Assembly: GCA_950097015.1 (NCBI GenBank) | Contig: CATNEN010000005.1 | Location: 5,766,001-5,830,000 of the forward strand | DNA length: 64,000 nt | Direction: 5' to 3' | Source: Macrostomum hystrix | Lineage: Eukaryota; Animalia; Platyhelminthes | In this document: one piece after another, positions 17,141 through 30,500 of the stretch | Layout of the letters: each line of letters opens with the position of its first letter | Numbering within the stretch: position 1 is the stretch's first letter | Position numbers and translations under genes: made by a program | The notes under the pieces: model-generated | What the model was told of the DNA's origin: nothing | Seen by the model: only the letters and a program-made list of their open reading frames with translations | Databases searched by the model: none

Positions 17141-18508
17141 TCAATGATGAGCCGGTCGAGCGCAGTACTGCAGAAGCTCGCGAACTATAGAAACCAATCC
17201 ATTTCGAAAGGTCGGACTCAGAATAGTAGCTAAAATCGTGTGACTGCTCAGCAACAGTGGTTGCGCTAATATCATAATGCTATGATATAACACAGAGGCG
17301 TTTACGTGTAACCTATTTGCCAACAGGAGGATAAATGTTATAATTATGCCAAAAATTATCAACAGAATAAACACTAGACGACCAACCAGAATTTTCTTGA
17401 GCTCATTTGCCAGCAAGTGGCTGCCACCAGGCACTGTCGGCGCAATAACAATCGTCACAGCCGCAGCGTTGTCACAGGCATCATCGTCCTCATCGTCCTT
17501 ATCGACAGTGCTGTTTTTCAGTCGAGCATAACTCACCCGTGGTTGCTCAGCCACCGACTGCTCGGTGGGAGGTCCGCGGCAACAGGCACAGCACAGTTTT
17601 GAAGCGAACACAATCAGCATGATGACAGCTAGGACCATGAAGGTAAAGCAGAACATTAAAAAAAACAGAACATGAAATGTCACGAATTCGACCGAGTAGC
17701 GGGGATACGCTACAGCTAAAAGGTAGTTGACACCATTCTTTGTGCAGTAGAGGTAGCCGAAAAAGTTCAGATATGGACTGGCAACCAAAATGCCGATGAG
17801 AATGCCAATGAGCAGTGCGACTTTAACTCGCTTCAGGTTAACGAACAGCAGAACAGTCTGAGCTGGATGAGACCATTCCACAAGAAAGATGCCAATCAAT
17901 AGGTTGAAGACAAGGCTGGTATTCAGACAGATAAAATGTAAGCCGTAGTTAATATTCATCATGTAGACTAATATAGCAGCCGGTAGTACTGCTACAGAGA
18001 GACGCACCGATGAAATATAACCCCAGCAGATATCCATAACAGAGGCGGTCGAGAACGCCAAGCCCATGCCGGAAAGAGCCCTGAGCAGAAACAGCTGCAT
18101 GCCAACCTGGTCAGAGCCTTGACCTGTTGAACTTCTCTGCCTCAACCAGACAGCCAGTGAGATGAGACCAGCCAGCGCAAATAGGCAGTGAAGTATCACG
18201 GCAAGCAGTTTAATAGCGAATACATTTTCTTCGTTAAAGTGAAGAGCGACCAGTTCGCAATTATCGGATCGTTTTGTGACGCACATCAACGGCGGCAAAG
18301 TACTTTTAGCATCGCCAATGAGCCAACGCCAATTGGACAATCGGGTCTGATTGTCGGAACAGCGCCAGTGCATTCGAATTTTGTTCAGGTACAAAGCGTG
18401 ACTGTCCGAGTCCCATGGAGAATGATTCGCAGCGTAGTGCTCAGCGGAAATGCCACCCGGAAGAAAGTCTTCGTCCAGCATCTCCTGTACAATATTCTGA
18501 AGCCACAT
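17141..18508 (-). CDS. Intronless orphan seven-transmembrane receptor (divergent rhodopsin-like GPCR), 455 aa
   Basis: Seven hydrophobic segments follow a ~90-aa N-terminus with N-glycosylation sequons (NHS, NQT). There is a Cys in ECL2 (YLYC), a long acidic ICL3, a CCACC cluster after TM5, and an SPTFR helix-8-like end. The DRY position reads EWS. Confidence 0.75.
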   Translation of the reverse strand: MWLQNIVQEMLDEDFLPGGISAEHYAANHSPWDSDSHALYLNKIRMHWRCSDNQTRLSNWRWLIGDAKSTLPPLMCVTKRSDNCELVALHFNEENVFAIKLLAVILHCLFALAGLISLAVWLRQRSSTGQGSDQVGMQLFLLRALSGMGLAFSTASVMDICWGYISSVRLSVAVLPAAILVYMMNINYGLHFICLNTSLVFNLLIGIFLVEWSHPAQTVLLFVNLKRVKVALLIGILIGILVASPYLNFFGYLYCTKNGVNYLLAVAYPRYSVEFVTFHVLFFLMFCFTFMVLAVIMLIVFASKLCCACCRGPPTEQSVAEQPRVSYARLKNSTVDKDDEDDDACDNAAAVTIVIAPTVPGGSHLLANELKKILVGRLVFILLIIFGIIITFILLLANRLHVNASVLYHSIMILAQPLLLSSHTILATILSPTFRNGLVSIVRELLQYCARPAHH

Positions 18509-19834: not shown

Positions 19835-22800
19835 CTAGAACAGTTCAATCCGACCAGTCGTGGCACTCTTTCTAAGAAACTCCTTAGCAACAGGAAACGA
19901 GTCCGTCAGGCGAAACCCGGCAGTTCTGGCCCATCTTAGAGGGGCCGATAGCCAAGAGTCTGGGGATAGAGAGTAGAACCAGCCGAGAGCTTCGTTCACA
20001 ACAGCGACTGGGACAACCTGCGTCGGGTTGGGTGATCACGAATGTCAGTGCGAGAGGCGAACGCGTTAACTAACCGCTTCAACATACAAAACAGACCAGG
20101 GCACAAAAACTGACATCGAAACACCTCAGAACACACAAATAGACATATACAGACATCCAAAACAGACATTGACACACATCCAAAACAGACATATACTGAC
20201 ATCCAAAACAGAAACATACAGATAGACATCAAAAACAAAACAGACATACAGACATCAAAAACAGACATCAAAAAACAGGCATTGACAGACATACAAAAAC
20301 AGACACCAAAAACAGACACCAAAAACAGACACCAAAAACAGACATTGACAGACATACAAAAACAGACATTGAGAGACATTCAAAACAGACATTTACAGAC
20401 ACACAGAACAGTAGCACAGGCATTAAAAGTCAAGGCGGTCTCACCTGTCGCTGCCTCTGAGTCTCATAGTCTTTCAGGTAGATCGGATCGGCAGGATCAG
20501 CTCCGTTGCTAGCCGCCTCAATGAGCAGTTTGGTGAGACACGCGGCGTCCTCCATGCCGAGGTTCATGCCTTGGCCAGCTAGCGGGGAGAGTCGGTGGGC
20601 CGCGTCGCCAGCCAGGACGATTCGTTCGACGCTGTATCGATTGGCGTGCATGAAGCCTAGAGGAAACGCCGCCCTGCTAGACGGTTGAACGGCCGTAACT
20701 AAGGGCGCCGCTGATTGACCCGGTCCGGTTGCTAAGCGACGATTTAGACTAGCTAAAAAATCGGCGTCACTAGCAGCTAGAAGGGCTGAGATTTGATCGG
20801 ACCGATCGCACCAGACCAACGAGGCGTAGCGGCCTGGCAGGGGCAGCAGGGCGATCGGACCGTCGGGCAGGAAGCGTTGAAACGCTTCGCCGGAGAGGCC
20901 ATCCGGACCGTCGATCTGGGGTGACCAAGATAATTGAGAAGTTCTATTTCTTGATGCGATTCTTGCTTCGTTTCCTGCTTCGATTCTTTCTACTACGGTT
21001 CCTGCTTCGATTCCATATACAATGCTCTTGCTTCGATTCTAGCAACTATGTTCCTGCTTCGATTCTTTCTACTACGGTTCCTGCTTCGATTCCATATACA
21101 ATGCTCTTGCTTCGATTCTAGCAACAATGTTCCTGCTACGATTCTAACTAATACTTTTCTGCTTCGATTTTAGCATCTATGTTCCTGCTTCGATTCTAAC
21201 TACTAATTTTCTGCTTCGATTCTAGCAACTATGTTCCTGCTTCGATTCTAACTACTACTTTTCTGCTTCGATTCTAGGAACTATGTTCCTGCTTCGATTC
21301 TAACTACTACTTTCCTGCTTCGATTCTAACTAATACTTTTCTGCTTCGATTCTAGCAACTATGTTCCTGCTTCGATTCTAACTACTACTTTTCTGCTTCG
21401 ATTCTAGCAACTATGTTCCTGCTTCGATTCTAACTACTACTTTCCTGCTTCGATTCTTGCTACTAATTTTCTGCTTCGATTCCATATACTATGCTCTTGC
21501 TTCGATTCTAACTACGGTTCCTGCTTCGATTCTAACTACGGTTCCTGATTCGATTCTAGCTACGGTTCCTGCTTCGATTCTAACTACGGTTCCTGCTTCG
21601 ATTCTAACTACGGTTCCTGCTTCGATTCTAACTACGGCTCCTGCTTGGATTCTAAAAACACTTACTGCTTAGTTTGCAGCTACGAATATTACTAAGATAC
21701 GAGTATGAATAATTCTGTGAAAAGCTGATGCGATTCAAGCTGCGGTTCTAGCTCACCTCCAGTGTGGCAACCATAGCCCGATGCCTTGAATAGGGAATGT
21801 CAACAGCTTGGATGCCAGCCAATCGGCGCACAGGAGAACCGAATCCGTCGCAGCCAATCAGAAGTCGAGTTCGCAGAATGCTTTTATCATTCAGCTGCAG
21901 CCGCAGGTGACTCCGCCTATCGTAGCTGTTCTCGTCCACCAGGCGTTCCAGACGACAGCCTTCACGGAGTTGGGCGCCTGATCAAATACAAAAATTAGAT
22001 AATGTTCAGCTTAAGTGCTTTGTCCCCCGTAGATTAAAAAACCTGGTGGAATGTCACTTTAATAAGCAACCGTTTCAATAATGTCACTCTTAAGAGAATC
22101 ACTCGCTCAAAAGACAATGTCACTCCGAGAATAATCCCACAGAAAACAATGTCACTCCTAGGAGAATCGCACAGAAAACAATGTCACTCCTAGGAGAATC
22201 GCACAGAAAACAATGTCACTCCTAGGAGAATCGCACAGAAAACAATGTCACTCCTAGGAGAATCGCACAGAAAACAATGTCACTCCTAGGAGAATCGCAC
22301 AGAAAACAATGTCACTCCTAGGAGAATCGCACAGAAAACAATGTCACTCCGAGAATAATCGCACAGAAAACAATGTCACTCCGAGAATAATCGCACAGAA
22401 AACAATGTCACTCCGAGAATAATCGCACAGAAAACAATGTCACTCCTGGTGGAAAACAGAATGACTGAAAAACCCAGTCGAGCAGAGATTACTAACCAGA
22501 ACTAGCCGCTTTCCTTGCCAGCCTAGCTACAACAGGCGCCAGTTCTGTAACAGAGGCTAGTGCGCCATTATCACCGCCATCTATAGCATTATCGGTGGCG
22601 TTAAAATTCAACGCGGCAGTCGAATCGCTTTCCAGGACACGCATTCGACGAATTTTAGCTACGCGCGAATCCGAATCATCCCAGACACCCAGACGACGAA
22701 GCTGATCAACGGAACTAGGACTGAGGGCTACGGCTCGATTGCTGAAACCACCGCTGCCAGCAGATGCGGCATTGTTCTTCGGCTCATTCAAAGCTGGCAA

Positions 22801-23019
22801 ACGTCCGGCCTCTAATAAAAGTACACGATAATTCGGCGCATTAGTCGAAGCGCCAGCCAGGCCGCAAGCGATGGCCAAACCAACTGGACCGCCGCCAATG
22901 ATAGTGACGTCGACATCGGTAGAATCTGATGATAGACAGCGACTTCTCTGTCCGTTAACTGACAGACGAAGCCAGTTGACGGGCGCGCGGGCAGACAGAG
23001 GTAGCCGAGCTAGACTAGC
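19835..23019 (-). CDS. COQ6: Ubiquinone biosynthesis monooxygenase COQ6. Exons (minus): 23019-22497, 21977-21757, 20915-20445, 20017-19835; initiator ATG not present in these exons
   Basis: The translation contains DVDVTIIGGGPVGLAIA (FAD-binding), VLLLEAG, RAVALSP, LLIGCDGFGSPVR, AFQRFLPDGPIALLPL and LAGDAAHRLSPLAGQGMNLG. The four exons total 1398 nt in frame, with an Arg/Ser/Leu-rich presequence-like N-terminus. Confidence 0.93.
20095..20410 (+). repeat. Degenerate aaaacagacat-type tandem repeat (COQ6 intron 3)
   Basis: Short, irregular tandem units. Confidence 0.85.
20945..21660 (+). repeat. Minisatellite, ~24-27-bp unit ttcctgcttcgattctaactacgg (COQ6 intron 2)
   Basis: Direct tandem copies. 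Confidence 0.92.
22135..22450 (+). repeat. Minisatellite, 32-bp unit cacagaaaacaatgtcactcctaggagaatcg (COQ6 intron 1)
   Basis: Direct tandem copies. Confidence 0.95.
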
Positions 23020-23092
23020 CTGGAAGAGAAATTATAAGGCGACGTCTTATATACACGTCTTAAATTTAGTGGACCATAGACTATATGAATTC

Positions 23093-24563
23093 AGGCTCAG
23101 TGTGAGAGGACTTGGCTGGGTGTTGGATGGGGTTTGAGGCTCAGTGTGAGAGGACTGGGCTGGGTGTTGGATGGGGTTTGAGGCTCAGTGTGAGAGGACT
23201 GGGCTGGGTGTTGGATGGGGTTTGAGGCTCAGTGTGAGAGGACTGGGCTGGGTGTTGGATGGGGTTTGAGGCTCTGTGTGAGAGGACTGGGGTGCGTGTT
23301 GGATGGAGTTTGAGGCTCAGTGTGAGAGGACTGGGCTGGGTGTTGGATGGGGTTTGAGGCTCAGTGTGAGAGGACTGGGGTGCGTGTTGGATGGGGTTTG
23401 AGGCTCAGTGTGAGAGGACTGGGGTGCGTGTTGGATGGGGTTTGAGGCTCAGTGTGAGAGGACTGGGGTGGGTGTTGGATGGGGTTTGAGGATCAGTGTG
23501 AGAGGACTTGGCTGGGTGTTGGATGGGGTTTGAGGCTCAGTGTGAGAGGACTTGGCTGGGTGTTGGATGGGGTTTGAGGCTCAGTGTGAGAGGACTGGGC
23601 TGGGTGTTGGATGGGGTTTGATGCTCAGTGTGAGAGGACTGGGGTGCGTGTTGGATGGGGTTTGAGGCTCAGTGTGAGAGGACTGGGGTGCGTGTTGGAT
23701 GGGGTTTGAGGCTCAGTGTGAGAGGACTGGCTGGGTGTTGGATGGGGTTTGAGGCTCAGTGTGAGAGGACTGGGCTGGGTGTTGGATGGGGTTTGAGGCT
23801 CTGTGTGAGAGGACTTGGCTGGGTGTTGGATGGGGTTTGAGGCTCAGTGTGAGAGGACTGGGCTGGGTGTTGGATGGGGTTTGAGGCTCAGTGTGAGAGG
23901 ACTGGGGTGCGTGTTGGATGGGGTTTGAGGCTCAGTGTGAGAGGACTGGGCTGGGTGTTGGATGGGGTTTGATGCTCAGTGTGAGAGGACTGGGGTGCGT
24001 GTTGGATGGGGTTTGAGGCTCAGTGTGAGAGGACTGGGGTGCGTGTTGGATGGGGTTTGAGGCTCAGTGTGAGAGGACTGGGCTGGGTGTTGGATGGGGT
24101 TTGAGGCTCTGTGTGAGAGGACTTGGCTGGGTGTTGGATGGGGTTTGAGGCTCAGTGTGAGAGGACTGGCTGGGTGTTGGATGGGGTTTGAGGCTCAGTG
24201 TGAGAGGACTGGGGTGGGTGTTGGATGGGGTTTGAGGCTCAGTGTGAGAGGACTGGGGTGGGTGTTGGATGGGGTTTGATGCTCAGTGTGAGAGGACTGG
24301 GGTGGGTGTTGGATGGGGTTTGAGGCTCAGTGTGAGAGGACTGGGCTGGGTGTTGGATGGGGTTTAATGCACAGTGTGAGAGGACTGGGGTGCGTGTTGG
24401 ATGGGGTTTGAGGCTCAGTGTGAGAGGACTGGGCTGGGTGTTGGATGGGGTTTGAGGCTCAGTGTGAGAGGACTTGGCTGGGTGTTGGATGGGGTTTGAG
24501 GCTCAGTGTGAGAGGACTGGGCTGGGTGTTGGATGGGGTTTGAGGCTCAGTGTGAGAGGACTT
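23093..24563 (+). repeat. G-rich minisatellite, 44-bp unit gaggctcagtgtgagaggactgggctgggtgttggatggggttt (~33 copies)
   Basis: Direct tandem copies immediately upstream of the COQ6 acceptor. Confidence 0.97.
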
Positions 24564-26267: not shown

Positions 26268-27345
26268 TAATGACCAATACATGGATCTTTAATGACCAAT
26301 ACATGGATCTAGAATGACCAATACATGGATCTAGAATGACCAATACATGGATCTAGAATGACCAATACAGGGATCTAGAATGACCAATACAGGGATCTAG
26401 AATGACCAATACCCAAATCTAGAATGACCAATACATGGATCTAGAATGACCAATACCCGAATCTAGAAACACCAATACAGGTATCTAGAATGACCAATAC
26501 AGGTATCTAGAATGACCAATACAGGTATCTAGAATGACCAATACAGGTATCTAGAATGACCAATACAGGTATCTAGAATGACCAATACAGGTATCTAGAA
26601 TCACCAATACAGGTATCTAGAATGACCAATACAGGTATCTAGAATGACCAATACAGGGATCTAGAATGACCAATACATGGATCTAGAATGACCAATACAG
26701 GGATCTAGAATGACCAATACAGGGATCTAGAATGACCAATACAGGGATCTAGAATGACCAATACAGGGATCTAGAATGACCAATACAGGGATCTAGAATG
26801 ACCAATACAGGGATCTAGAATGACCAATACAGGGATCTAGAATGACCAATACCCGAATCTAGAATGACCAATACAGGGATCTAGAATGACCAATACAGGG
26901 ATCTAGAATGACCAATACATGGATCTAGAATGACCAATACATGGATCTAGAATGACCAATACATGGATCTAGAATGACCAATACAGAGATCTAGAATGAC
27001 CAATACAGGGATCTAGAATGACCAATACCCGAATCTAGAATGACCAATACAGGGATCTAGAATGACCAATACAGGGATCTAGAATGACCAATACATGGAT
27101 CTAGAATGACCAATACATGGTTCTAGAATGACCAATACATGGATCTAGAATGACCAATACAGGGATCTAGAATGACCAATACAGGGATCTAGAATGACCA
27201 ATACAGGGATCTAGAATGACCAATACAGGGATCTAGAATGACCAATACAGGGATCTAGAATGACCAATACAGGTATCTAGAATGACCAGGTCCAATACAG
27301 GTATCTAGAATGACCAATACAGGAATCTAGAATGACCAATACTAG
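26268..27345 (+). repeat. Minisatellite, 22-bp unit tctagaatgaccaatacaggga (~48 copies)
   Basis: Direct tandem copies just downstream of the ATP9 stop. Confidence 0.97.
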
Positions 27346-27551
27346 ATCATAAATGAGTAATCCTAGATCTTGCTGGCACTATATTCTTAAAATTTTCTGT
27401 CGCATCTGACCTTTAAAAAGACAGTCAATTAAAAATAATCCAAAAAAAGAAATTTTTAAAACAAATTAATAGAAGAAACTTTTTGCCGATGAAAAGTTAA
27501 AACCAAGTAAACAAAAGACTGAATAAAGTGTTTAATAAAACAATAAGACAA

Positions 27552-30500
27552 TTACGCCTGCAGCTTTCTAGCAATGGGTGGACTCATCTGGTAGCGAACA
27601 AACTTTAGCAGGAAGAATGGAATCGAACTGACACCAGTGATAGCCAGCACCTTCCACAGGAAGTCTAGGGTTAGTATGAAGGCTCGATCTGCGGGAAAAA
27701 TAGTGGTTAGTGGCGGTACTGTTATAAAAAATATTAGCATTACACTACTGTTTAAGCGTTTAAGTAGAAATGTGCGCATTTTTACATTAAAAAATCTGTA
27801 AATGTAAGAAAAAAATGACGCGGACAGGATGAATGAGGAGAAGAGGAGAAATATTGATTGTTATAATGATCAGGTAATGGAAGGTAATGACTGGCCCTAG
27901 GACTCACCAAAGTACTCAGTAAGCACAAACATAGCAGTCACATAGCAGGTCAGACTAAGCAGTTCGGCCACAATCATTTGCCAGCACCAGGTTCGCACAG
28001 TTAAAGCAACCATGATGAGTTCGGTGAGCACAACGGCTGTAAAAGCGATGCTCACTACATGCAGGAAAGAGCCTTCGAATAGCCATAGAGAGCCGTACAT
28101 GATGATGCCGCCCTAAAAGGAATGAAACGTAGCAATTTAAAGTTTCCGTTACTTTTCTGCACCATTCCTACTTCCACCGTTACTTTAAGTGACTTTTATG
28201 GGACAGTAACTCCCACCGTTACTTTTTAGTTACTTTTCTGAAATAGCAAGTCACGCCCTTACTTTTTAGTCACTTTACAGAAAAATTTGCTCGCGCCGTT
28301 ACATTTGGTTACTGTTATGAAAACGTTACTCCTGTCGTTACTTTTCTTTAACAGTTGCTCACAAACAGGTTACTCGCGCACTTACTTCTGGTAACTTTTC
28401 TTGAATATTTACTACAACCGTTACATTCAGGTACTGTTCTGGATATGCTACTCACATCGTTACTTTTTAGTTACTAAAATATATACTCCCGCCGTTACTT
28501 TTAGTTACTTTTTGGAAGTACACTTACCTGGTAGAGCGAAATGGCTGTCCAAATAAAGAAAACTTTAGCCGACAATTCTCTGCCTTTGATTAGATCGCGG
28601 TATAATTCCGGAAATTTTTCAGCAGTGAAATCCGTCACGTCTTTATCAAATACTAGCGAAAATACTGGGAACATTGTGAACACGGTAGCGTAGCCAATCA
28701 TTAGGACGCCGGGGAATAGGCTAATAGCGACGTAGAAGAATACGGCTGAGAACACGGCTTGCATAGTAGAGATAATGAGGCCGCGGTGTACAATAAACTG
28801 GGCCAATACGGCCGTGTTCTTGTAGCACTGGCGTCCGTGTACCTAGGCGATGAAGCAATATATATGTGGCCTAGCCGCCGTAGAAACTACAGCTAGCCCA
28901 GTTGGGGGTGGGTTAGTGGCAGAGCGGTCTGACGAGCCTCCAAGGCCCAGTGAGAGTGTACACTGCCTGACGATGAGAAAGTCAGGGCAGATGTACACAC
29001 CTGTGTGAGTGTGTGCTCATGAGTCAGCGAAACGGGCAGAATTGCCTCCTCGCTGGCTGCGGGTCTACTGTGAGCAAATGCTGTACAGCCTTCCTGGTGC
29101 TTCTAAAAGATGTGTACAACTGTTCAGTCCATGGACTAGGGGCACTGGACACCACATTAAGATCCTAACCACTAGGCTACAAGCTCCATTGAATAGATAA
29201 AATTATAATATAGAAAAAGCTAAGGTATCAGTTACCAGCAGCAGCCTAGCAACGTGTTGAAATCTTGTGATGCTGAAATCGGCCGCAAGCGAAGCCTGCT
29301 TGCCCTCCTTGCCAACAATGCCCAGGCCGCAATCGGCCGCTTGAATCATGGCCACATCGTTGCCACCGTCGCCAACAGCGGCGCATCTTTTCCCCGTGTG
29401 CTCCTTCAATAGTTGGACAACTTCGGCCTTCTGGGTTGGCGAACAACGGCAGACAACAACGGCCGGGGCTTGGCAGGCCAGCTGAATGAAACGACGCTCG
29501 TCTTGTTCAACTGCGGCCTGCGAATTGGCGATTTTCAAGGTTTAGGGATTAAAGATTCATGATTAAATCTGATCTTGTTATGTCTACTTATTGCATAAAT
29601 AACACAGAATTACTACATAGGAGAGATCGGAAATGGGAGAGATCAGACATGGGAGAGATCGGACATGGGAGAGATCAGACATGGGAGAGATCAGACATGG
29701 GGAGATGAGAAAAGGGAGAGATGACCCAGGGGTGAGATGAGACAAGAAAGACATGGGACAAGGGAGAGATGAGACAAGGGAGACATGGGACAAGGGAGAG
29801 ATGAGACAAGGGAGAGATGACCCAGGGGAGAGATGAGACGCGGGAGAGATGAGACACATTAGAGATAAGATACGGGAGAGATGAGACAAGGGAAAGATGG
29901 GACATGGGAGAGATGAGACAAGGGAAAGATGGGACATGGGAGAGATCAGACACGGGGAGATGAGAAAAGGGAGAGATGACCCAGGGGAGAGATGGCACAA
30001 GGGAGAGGTGAGACACGGGAGAGATGAGACACGGGAGAGATGAGACACATTAGAGATAAGATACGGGAGAGATGAGACAAGGGAAAGATGAGACACGGAA
30101 GAGATGAGACACGGAAGAGATGAGACACGGAAGAGATGAGACACGGAAGAGATGAGACACGGAAGAGATGAGACACGGAAGAGATGGGACATGGGAGAGA
30201 TAAGACAAGGGGGAGATGACCCAGAGGAGAGATGAGACAAGGAAGAGGTGAGACACGGGATAGACGCGATATAGGGAACTAGTAATGTTGTAAGGGCCGT
30301 ATCAAAGTTGTTTTTTCATCTCTCCGCTTTTAATCTAGAAGTGCAGCACAGTTAGATGAGGTGAACGGTTGCAGCAAACACCAACCTGCATATGCTGGCC
30401 AGTGATAACGATTCCCTGTCCAGCTTCAACCCGTCTAGCCATGCTGCGAATTTCATTATCTAGATCGGCGCTACGACAGGACGCGGGTTCGAATACGTAC

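What the first reader, a model, noticed from the sequence alone, without database searches (positions are those of the whole stretch)
22880..23040. COQ6 has no genomic start codon in its first coding exon; the flatworm spliced-leader AUG could supply it
Seen: a strong acceptor tttctcttccag|GCT at 23019 in phase 0, with an in-frame TAA five codons upstream. There is no ATG before the FAD-binding GGGPVG motif; the first in-frame ATG lies well inside the catalytic domain. Adding a single Met gives MASLARLPLSARAPVNWLRLSVNGQRSRCLSS, a plausible mitochondrial presequence, and a 466-aa protein of normal COQ6 length. Established: platyhelminth spliced leaders end in AUG, which can serve as the initiator Met. 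Inference: translation and mitochondrial targeting of this essential enzyme depend on trans-splicing, possibly as a downstream cistron of ATP9 (same strand, stop 4.5 kb upstream). This relies on the organism being a flatworm.
Basis: partly seen in the sequence, partly recalled or inferred. Interest (0 to 1): 0.7.

Follow-up and report, generated by a model that had tools for sequence, protein, structure and literature searches.

The report
Spliced leader supplies COQ6 start codon
In this Macrostomum-type flatworm the ubiquinone-synthesis gene COQ6 has no start codon of its own, and RNA assemblies show the AUG-ending trans-spliced leader joined in frame to its first codon; this is a new example of a mechanism already known in flatworms.

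Summary
On the minus strand the acceptor tttctcttccag|GCT lies at 23019, an in-frame TAA lies at 23034-23032, and there is no in-frame ATG before GGGPVG (22896-22879). The first genomic in-frame ATG is codon 127.

The main inference is supported by RNA-derived contigs. In two runs of one study, 1.5-kb contigs match exon 1 without a difference. They skip intron 1 and continue past the acceptor with GCGAAGACTCAATTTATTGCAT-G. These are the last 23 nt of the published 35-nt Macrostomum spliced leader, which ends in ATG. The mRNA therefore reads ...UUGCAUG|GCUAGU, with the leader AUG as first AUG and in frame.

Exon arithmetic gives 466 aa. The exons match the UbiH/COQ6 monooxygenase family models. 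The 32 residues before the catalytic core have 5 Arg and no acidic residue, like a mitochondrial presequence.

Initiation at the leader AUG is inferred, not shown. The ATP9 operon idea is untested and looks weak: the spacer is about 1.96 kb after removing tandem repeats, against a published 1-kb cut-off.

The mechanism has been known since Cheng et al. 2006. This scan has already confirmed it for other genes of the same genome (CHMP6, SFMBT, PPP2R3C). I rate it a new member of a known kind, of modest interest.

The parts
23020..23031 (-). Polypyrimidine tract and trans-splice acceptor tttctcttccAG. The spliced leader is joined immediately 3' of 23020.
   Evidence: Sequence. The leader-bearing loose end lies at 23020 in contigs of X3 and X4. 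The site fits the [T/C]TNCAG motif.
23032..23034 (-). In-frame TAA in the outron. It closes the COQ6 frame to any upstream genomic start.
22497..23019 (-). COQ6 coding exon 1 (523 nt). It has no genomic start codon. It encodes the 31 presequence residues that follow the leader Met, then the FAD-binding beta-alpha-beta fold (GGGPVG at 22896-22879). The donor is G|GTTAGT.
   Evidence: RNA contigs cover 22496-23020 with 0 differences. TIGR01988 E 1.7e-21 and TIGR01989 (COQ6) E 3.9e-18, both starting at exon residue 36-37.
22642..22644 (-). First in-frame genomic ATG (codon 127), downstream of the FAD-binding motif. A protein started here would lack both the presequence and the Rossmann motif.
21757..21977 (-). 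COQ6 exon 2 (221 nt). Acceptor tttgatcag|G, donor GAG|GTGAGC.
   Evidence: The loose end at the exon 1 donor in X1, X3 and X4 matches 21976-21947 exactly. Family hits. Boundaries.
20445..20915 (-). COQ6 exon 3 (471 nt), holding the conserved ...LAGDAAHRLSPLAGQGMNLG... FAD/substrate region.
   Evidence: TIGR01988 E 3e-47 and TIGR01989 E 1.9e-43. PDB hits to UbiI/VisC-type hydroxylases. Boundaries are inferred from GT-AG, frame and profile continuity.
19835..20017 (-). COQ6 exon 4 coding part (60 codons plus TAG at 19837-19835). An AATAAA follows about 45 nt downstream. The contig lengths imply a 3'UTR of about 84 nt.
   Evidence: No family hit for this short C-terminal piece.
23093..24562 (.). 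44-bp tandem array (33.5 copies, 95% matches) starting 74 nt upstream of the acceptor. It presumably lies in the outron or spacer.
27552..27688 (-). Last coding exon of the upstream same-strand gene ATP9 (class-2 P4-ATPase). Stop TAA at 27554-27552, ATTAAA at 27536.
   Evidence: PhoLip_ATPase_C hit on the preceding exon.

Best explanation
COQ6 in this Macrostomum-type flatworm is transcribed as a precursor whose first coding exon begins at a splice acceptor (23019) and has no start codon. The spliceosome removes the upstream outron, which carries an in-frame TAA. It joins the spliced leader to the acceptor; the leader ends in ...UUGCAUG. The leader's terminal AUG becomes the first AUG of the mRNA, 32 nt from the cap and directly in frame with GCU AGU CUA. 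Shown: the mRNA structure, meaning the leader-exon 1 junction and the exon 1-exon 2 junction. Inferred: scanning ribosomes start at that AUG and make a 466-aa COQ6. Its first ~32 residues, MASLARLPLSARAPVNWLRLSVNGQRSRCLSS, would act as a mitochondrial presequence, with a possible R-3 processing site RCL|S. Only trans-spliced transcripts can then encode a functional, targeted enzyme.
For: 1. Two contigs (X3 1505 nt, X4 1514 nt) match 22496-23020 with 0 differences. They continue past 23020 with ATGCAATAAATTGAGTCTTCGC on the + strand. On the mRNA strand this is GCGAAGACTCAATTTATTGCAT plus the G at 23020. That string is the 3' end of the published spliced leader CGGTCTCTTACTGCGAAGACTCAATTTATTGCATG (PMC8629364). 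[quoted passage not shown]
2. This 23-mer is absent from the 64-kb window even with 3 mismatches. It is therefore not a nearby cis exon.
3. The same contigs skip the 519-nt intron 1, and the loose end matches 21976-21947. They are therefore processed RNA.
4. There is an in-frame TAA upstream and no in-frame ATG before codon 127. All earlier ATGs in exon 1 are out of frame.
5. The leader contains no other ATG (read from the sequence quoted).
6. The exons match the UbiH/COQ6 family models. Homology starts at exon residue 36-37, which leaves an N-terminal extension.
7. That extension has 5 Arg, 0 Asp/Glu, and 16 of 32 residues Ala, Leu or Ser.
8. Use of the flatworm leader AUG as initiator Met is established. 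More than 40 Schistosoma mansoni cDNAs require it (Cheng et al. 2006, as summarised in PMC9851317, and PMC12582326).
Against: - No ribosome-profiling or N-terminal peptide data exist, so initiation at the leader AUG is inferred.
- The junction rests on assembled contigs from two samples of a single study. The contigs of the second study (X1, X2) stop short of the acceptor.
- Contigs show the dominant form only, so a minor cis-spliced isoform cannot be excluded.
- The run kind is not on record as RNA. It is deduced from the removed intron and the leader.
- The -3 position of the leader AUG is U, a weak Kozak context, although +4 is G.
- The hydrophobic moment of the presequence is not above shuffles (586 of 2000 reach it). 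No dedicated targeting predictor was available.
Confidence: 0.85

Rival explanations
1. An upstream cis-spliced exon supplies the ATG, for example the 25163-24855 ORF with the phase-0 donor CAA|gttagt. The leader-bearing form would then be a minor or alternative product.
For: A 102-codon ATG-initiated ORF with a donor-like site exists on the same strand 1.8 kb upstream. Contigs cannot exclude rare isoforms (caveat).
Against: Both contigs that reach the acceptor carry the spliced leader, not this exon. The ORF has no family match (best Pfam E 0.15) and is low in complexity. It would put about 73 residues in front of the presequence and bury it.
Confidence: 0.05
2. The leader is added, but translation starts elsewhere, at a near-cognate codon in exon 1 or at the internal AUG (codon 127). 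The leader AUG would be skipped.
For: The leader AUG has U at -3. Non-AUG initiation on trans-spliced mRNAs has been reported in nematodes (PMC9851317).
Against: The leader AUG is the first AUG, lies 32 nt from the cap, has G at +4 and is in frame. Starting at codon 127 would remove the FAD-binding motif and the presequence. The next AUGs in exon 1 are out of frame. The leader AUG is reported to act as initiator in schistosomes.
Confidence: 0.05
3. The leader on the contigs is an assembly chimera and does not reflect a real molecule.
For: The leader is shared by thousands of transcripts, and de Bruijn assemblers can mis-join at shared words. Only 22-23 nt of the leader are present.
Against: The same junction appears independently in two runs. 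It lies exactly at a canonical AG acceptor that fits the trans-splice motif. The truncation at about 23 nt is what is expected when 31-letter words stop being gene-specific (my inference). The genome offers no other start.
Confidence: 0.03
4. COQ6 is the downstream cistron of an ATP9-COQ6 operon. One promoter upstream of ATP9 would make a polycistronic precursor that trans-splicing resolves. This adds to the best explanation and does not replace it.
For: ATP9 is the next gene upstream on the same strand. No ORF with a family match lies between them. About 40% of trans-spliced M. lignano genes are assigned to operons, and repeats inflate the spacers (PMC8629364).
Against: The distance from stop to acceptor is 4532 nt. 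About 1960 nt remain after subtracting the two tandem arrays, above the paper's 1-kb repeat-adjusted cut-off. Most trans-spliced genes are monocistronic.
Confidence: 0.2

Closest known systems
[quoted passage not shown]
   Same: The leader ends in AUG and is joined directly in frame to a conserved ORF that has no usable AUG of its own. The acceptor sits where the start codon would be.
   Different: The organism is a free-living macrostomorph, not a schistosome. COQ6 is not named in this context in any paper I could search (0 papers). Translation from the leader AUG was not tested here.
Macrostomum lignano spliced-leader trans-splicing (Wudarski 2017, PMC5730564; Ustyantsev & Berezikov 2021, PMC8629364; Wiberg 2023, PMC10468722)
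   Same: The leader 3' sequence is identical. The acceptor fits the [T/C]TNCAG motif. The gene is conserved with human genes, which is the class enriched among trans-spliced genes. Repeat-rich spacers are also described there.
   Different: Those papers count trans-spliced genes and operons. They only remark that the terminal ATG is 'sometimes' or 'likely' a start codon. They give no tally or list of genes that depend on it.
Other genes without a start codon in this same genome, found by this scan (CHMP6, SFMBT, PPP2R3C confirmed; NDUFA5, DPH7, NSA2, HYI, NUDT12-like noted)
   Same: The pattern is the same: an acceptor directly before codon 2, no genomic ATG, and leader-AUG contigs.
   Different: Here the donated Met heads a presumed mitochondrial presequence. 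NDUFA5 would be a similar mitochondrial case but has not been followed up.
COQ6 / UbiH-UbiF-UbiI family flavin monooxygenases (TIGR01989, TIGR01988)
   Same: It has the GxGxxG FAD fold, the GDAAH...G-G-N-G motif region, a length of about 466 aa and an N-terminal extension ahead of the core.
   Different: The start codon is not encoded in the gene.

Membership tests
mRNAs initiated at the spliced-leader AUG (flatworm slORF) | The organism's spliced leader ends in AUG | tested here: met
   The leader fragment on the contigs ends ...TTGCAT+G. The published Macrostomum leaders end in ATG.
mRNAs initiated at the spliced-leader AUG (flatworm slORF) | The leader is found joined to this mRNA at the proposed acceptor | tested here: met
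   The loose end at 23020 in contigs of X3 and X4 equals the 3' 23 nt of the leader. The 23-mer is absent from the window.
mRNAs initiated at the spliced-leader AUG (flatworm slORF) | The leader AUG is in frame with the conserved ORF | tested here: met
   ATG|GCT AGT CTA is phase 0 at 23019.
mRNAs initiated at the spliced-leader AUG (flatworm slORF) | No alternative genomic in-frame AUG could give a complete protein | tested here: met
   TAA at 23034-23032. The first in-frame ATG is codon 127, after the FAD motif.
mRNAs initiated at the spliced-leader AUG (flatworm slORF) | Translation actually starts at the leader AUG | not testable with these tools
   This needs Ribo-seq initiation mapping, N-terminal proteomics or a reporter.
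COQ6 (ubiquinone biosynthesis monooxygenase, TIGR01989) | Sequence matches the family model | tested here: inconclusive
Exons 1-3 each hit TIGR01988 and TIGR01989 as the two best families, with TIGR01989 bits of 65.6, 37.1 and 149. COQ6 is the animal member of this family (general knowledge).
COQ6 (ubiquinone biosynthesis monooxygenase, TIGR01989) | N-terminal GxGxxG FAD-binding fold and GD(A/S)AH motif | tested here: met
   IIGGGPVGLAIACGL is in exon 1 and LAGDAAHRLSPLAGQGMNLG is in exon 3.
COQ6 (ubiquinone biosynthesis monooxygenase, TIGR01989) | Mitochondrial presequence | tested here: inconclusive
   The first 32 residues have 5 Arg and no acidic residue, are rich in Ala, Leu and Ser, and contain an R-3-like RCL|S site. 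The hydrophobic moment is not above shuffles. No MitoFates or TargetP was available.
Macrostomum SL-resolved operon (criterion of PMC8629364) | Adjacent same-strand genes with the downstream gene trans-spliced | tested here: met
   ATP9 stops at 27552 and COQ6 is trans-spliced at 23019.
Macrostomum SL-resolved operon (criterion of PMC8629364) | Repeat-adjusted intergenic distance under 1 kb | tested here: not met
   4532 nt from stop to acceptor, about 1960 nt after removing the TRF arrays. This is measured from the stop codon because the ATP9 poly(A) site is unknown. Interspersed repeats were not assessable beyond this window (no copies within it).
Macrostomum SL-resolved operon (criterion of PMC8629364) | Polycistronic precursor RNA spanning both genes | not tested

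The most novel reading that the evidence does not exclude
The loss of COQ6's own start codon might not be a one-off. It could be part of an old, lineage-wide ratchet in which essential mitochondrial and housekeeping genes (COQ6, perhaps NDUFA5 and others in this genome) became dependent on the leader AUG. Respiration would then depend on trans-splicing, and the leader's terminal AUG would be held fixed across all flatworms. A further possibility is co-transcription of COQ6 with the flippase gene ATP9 through a minisatellite-filled 4.5-kb spacer.
Probability: 0.2. Interest if true: 0.45.

Novelty: new member of a known kind. Interest (0 to 1): 0.3.

Why it matters
- Annotation: gene finders that need a genomic ATG will truncate this COQ6 to an inactive fragment starting at codon 127, or will invent an upstream exon. 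Knowing that the Met comes from the leader gives the correct 466-aa protein with its targeting sequence.
- Biology: this is an essential respiratory-chain cofactor enzyme whose translation and presumed organelle targeting both depend on trans-splicing. It adds a case from an early-branching free-living flatworm to a phenomenon documented mainly in schistosomes. It also supports the idea that such dependent genes keep the leader's terminal AUG conserved.
- Limit: it does not change the understanding of the mechanism.

Tried and rejected
- Word search with exon 1: 857 candidates shared words, and none scored E<=1e-5. The length filter (96-305 aa) excludes full-length COQ6 proteins, so this blank says nothing.
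- Cheng et al. 2006 is not held in the library. I could not check whether COQ6 or other mitochondrial enzymes are on its list. Its content is cited only through PMC9851317 and PMC12582326.
- 'COQ6' together with 'spliced leader' returned 0 papers. The search for 'mitochondrial targeting' with the leader terms returned two papers. The one I read (a schistosome phytochelatin synthase study) was irrelevant; the other, a Trypanosoma brucei paper, I did not open.
- The large HMMER representative search was not run.
- The upstream ORF 25163-24855 has no family support as a cis exon and no RNA support.
- The unique spacer segments were compared by blastn with the rest of the window to look for interspersed repeats. 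No copies were found, so the repeat-adjusted distance could not be reduced further.
- Species cannot be assigned from the leader. M. lignano, M. cliftonense and M. hystrix share the 3' 40 nt.
- The hydrophobic-moment test of the presequence did not beat shuffles.

Full report
**Observation**

The minus strand at 23060-23000 reads agacgtgtatataagacgtcgccttataatttctcttccag|GCTAGTCTAGCTCGG. The AG acceptor is at 23021-23020 and the first exon base at 23019. An in-frame TAA lies at 23034-23032, five codons upstream.

From 23019 the frame is open for 174 codons. It reads ASLARLPLSARAPVNWLRLSVNGQRSRCLSSDSTDVDVTIIGGGPVG.... A script listed every ATG in the exon. Only the one at 22644 is in frame. It is codon 127 when an added Met counts as 1, 84 residues after GGGPVG (22896-22879). 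The other eight are in the +1 frame.

**What the gene is**

Pfam gives FAD-binding monooxygenase domains on the three larger coding pieces. With NCBIfam, exons 1, 2 and 3 each have TIGR01988 (the UbiH/UbiF/VisC/COQ6 family) and TIGR01989 (COQ6) as their two best families. The TIGR01988 / TIGR01989 E-values are 1.7e-21 / 3.9e-18, 6.6e-10 / 1.7e-9 and 3e-47 / 1.9e-43. The closest solved structures are bacterial UbiI/VisC-type hydroxylases.

Homology begins at exon residue 35-37. The residues before it form an extension outside the catalytic core.

Exon boundaries with canonical GT-AG sites and continuous profile positions are as follows:

| Exon | Coordinates (minus strand) | Note |
|---|---|---|
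| 1 | 23019-22497 | donor G\|GTTAGT |
| 2 | 21977-21757 | |
| 3 | 20915-20445 | |
| 4 | 20017-19835 | includes stop TAG at 19837-19835 |

I did not send the joined protein to any tool.

**The decisive test**

One run search on 22450-23100 found six holders in two studies. I laid four of them on 22448-23092.

- Runs X3 and X4 (organism B, study P2) each give one contig, of 1505 and 1514 nt. Both lie on 22496-23020 with no difference.
- At the low end both contigs continue with a sequence that matches 21976-21947 exactly. Intron 1 (519 nt) has therefore been removed, and the contigs derive from processed RNA even though the run kind is not on record.
- At the high end both contigs continue for 22 nt with ATGCAATAAATTGAGTCTTCGC on the + strand. 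On the mRNA strand this is GCGAAGACTCAATTTATTGCAT, followed by the G at 23020 and then GCTAGTC.
- That 23-mer is the 3' end of the published 35-nt M. lignano spliced leader, CGGTCTCTTACTGCGAAGACTCAATTTATTGCATG (PMC8629364). [quoted passage not shown]
- The aligner ran one base into the acceptor only because the last G of the leader ATG equals the G of the AG. The mRNA sequence is unambiguous: ...UUGCAUG GCU AGU CUA.
- The 23-mer occurs nowhere in the 64-kb window, even with three mismatches.
- The contig lengths fit the four-exon model with a 3'UTR of about 84 nt ending shortly after an AATAAA.
- The contigs of the second study (X1, X2, organism A) cover only inner parts of exon 1 and say nothing about the 5' end. 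They differ at two sites: one is synonymous and the other is T60N.

**How it most likely works**

Shown:
- The mature COQ6 mRNA begins with the spliced leader, joined at 23019.
- The acceptor TTCCAG fits the trans-splice acceptor motif [T/C]TNCAG reported for M. lignano.
- The leader has no other ATG (read from the sequence). Its terminal AUG is therefore the first AUG of the mRNA, 32 nt from the cap. It has G at +4 and U at -3, and it is in frame.

Inferred:
- Ribosomes start at that AUG and make MASLARLPLSARAPVNWLRLSVNGQRSRCLSS-DSTDVDVTIIGGGPVG....
- The first 32 residues have 5 Arg and no acidic residue, and 16 of 32 are Ala, Leu or Ser. They contain an R-3-like RCL|S site, as expected of a matrix-targeting presequence.
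- The amphipathicity measure was not better than shuffles (586 of 2000), so this part rests on composition alone.
- An unprocessed transcript cannot make COQ6. The outron frame is closed by TAA, and the next AUGs in exon 1 are out of frame.

**Comparison with what is known**

All reported flatworm spliced leaders end in AUG, which can provide a start codon (PMC12582326, citing Cheng et al. 2006). [quoted passage not shown] 2006).

For Macrostomum, the genome papers note that the terminal ATG is likely or sometimes the start codon. They report that 20-39% of genes are trans-spliced. I found no list of dependent genes and no paper linking COQ6 with a spliced leader.

This scan has already noted 27 such cases in the same genome. 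Follow-up agents confirmed the same junction type for CHMP6, SFMBT and PPP2R3C. I did not re-test those.

The present case is therefore a well-supported new member of a known kind. Its one particular feature is that the donated Met heads a presumed mitochondrial presequence of an essential enzyme.

**The operon suggestion**

ATP9 is indeed the next gene upstream on the same strand. Its last exon ends with TAA at 27554-27552 and aligns to the C-terminus of human ATP9A (PDB 9vdk, E 9e-8).

The spacer is 4532 nt. It includes a 44-bp x 33.5 array (23093-24562) and a 22-bp x 48.5 array (26269-27342). About 1960 nt remain without them. That is more than the 1-kb repeat-adjusted cut-off used to call operons in M. 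lignano.

The remaining 1.7-kb AT-rich segment has no copies elsewhere in the window. Its one ORF, 25163-24855, has no family match. No reads could be laid there because the single call was used. I put the operon at about 0.2.

**Rivals**

- A cis-spliced upstream ATG exon is not seen in either contig. It would also bury the presequence (0.05).
- Initiation elsewhere on the trans-spliced mRNA would lose the FAD motif or need a non-AUG start despite an upstream in-frame AUG (0.05).
- An assembly chimera is unlikely. Two runs give the identical junction, exactly at a canonical acceptor (0.03).

**Limits**

- The junction evidence comes from contigs of one study, not raw reads.
- Isoform proportions, the transcription start, the translation start and the localisation are all untested.

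Noticed in passing
window 20106-20411, 20972-21659, 22103-22447, 23093-24562, 26269-27342: Every COQ6 intron and the upstream spacer are filled with distinct tandem minisatellites, with units of 13-78, 32, 44 and 22 bp and up to 48 copies at 94-96% matches. The 44-bp array starts only 74 nt upstream of the trans-splice acceptor.
   Followed up: partly
window 23046-23053 (minus strand): A TATA-like TATATAAG lies about 27 nt upstream of the trans-splice acceptor. If it were a real promoter element the outron would be extremely short. It is probably chance in AT-rich sequence.
   Followed up: no
window 17141-18508 (minus strand): An intronless 455-aa ATG-initiated ORF with many hydrophobic segments lies about 1.2 kb downstream of the COQ6 poly(A) region on the same strand. 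It has no Pfam match. It may be a lineage-specific membrane protein.
   Followed up: no
window 22678 and 22844: Contigs of runs X1 and X2 (organism A, a second study) differ from the window at two exon 1 sites: one is synonymous (D115) and one is T60N. This could be an allele, a homeologous copy or another strain.
   Followed up: partly
window 27552-28100 (minus strand): The 3' exons of an ATP9-type (class 2) P4-ATPase flippase gene. The C-terminal 43 residues align to human ATP9A (PDB 9vdk).
   Followed up: partly
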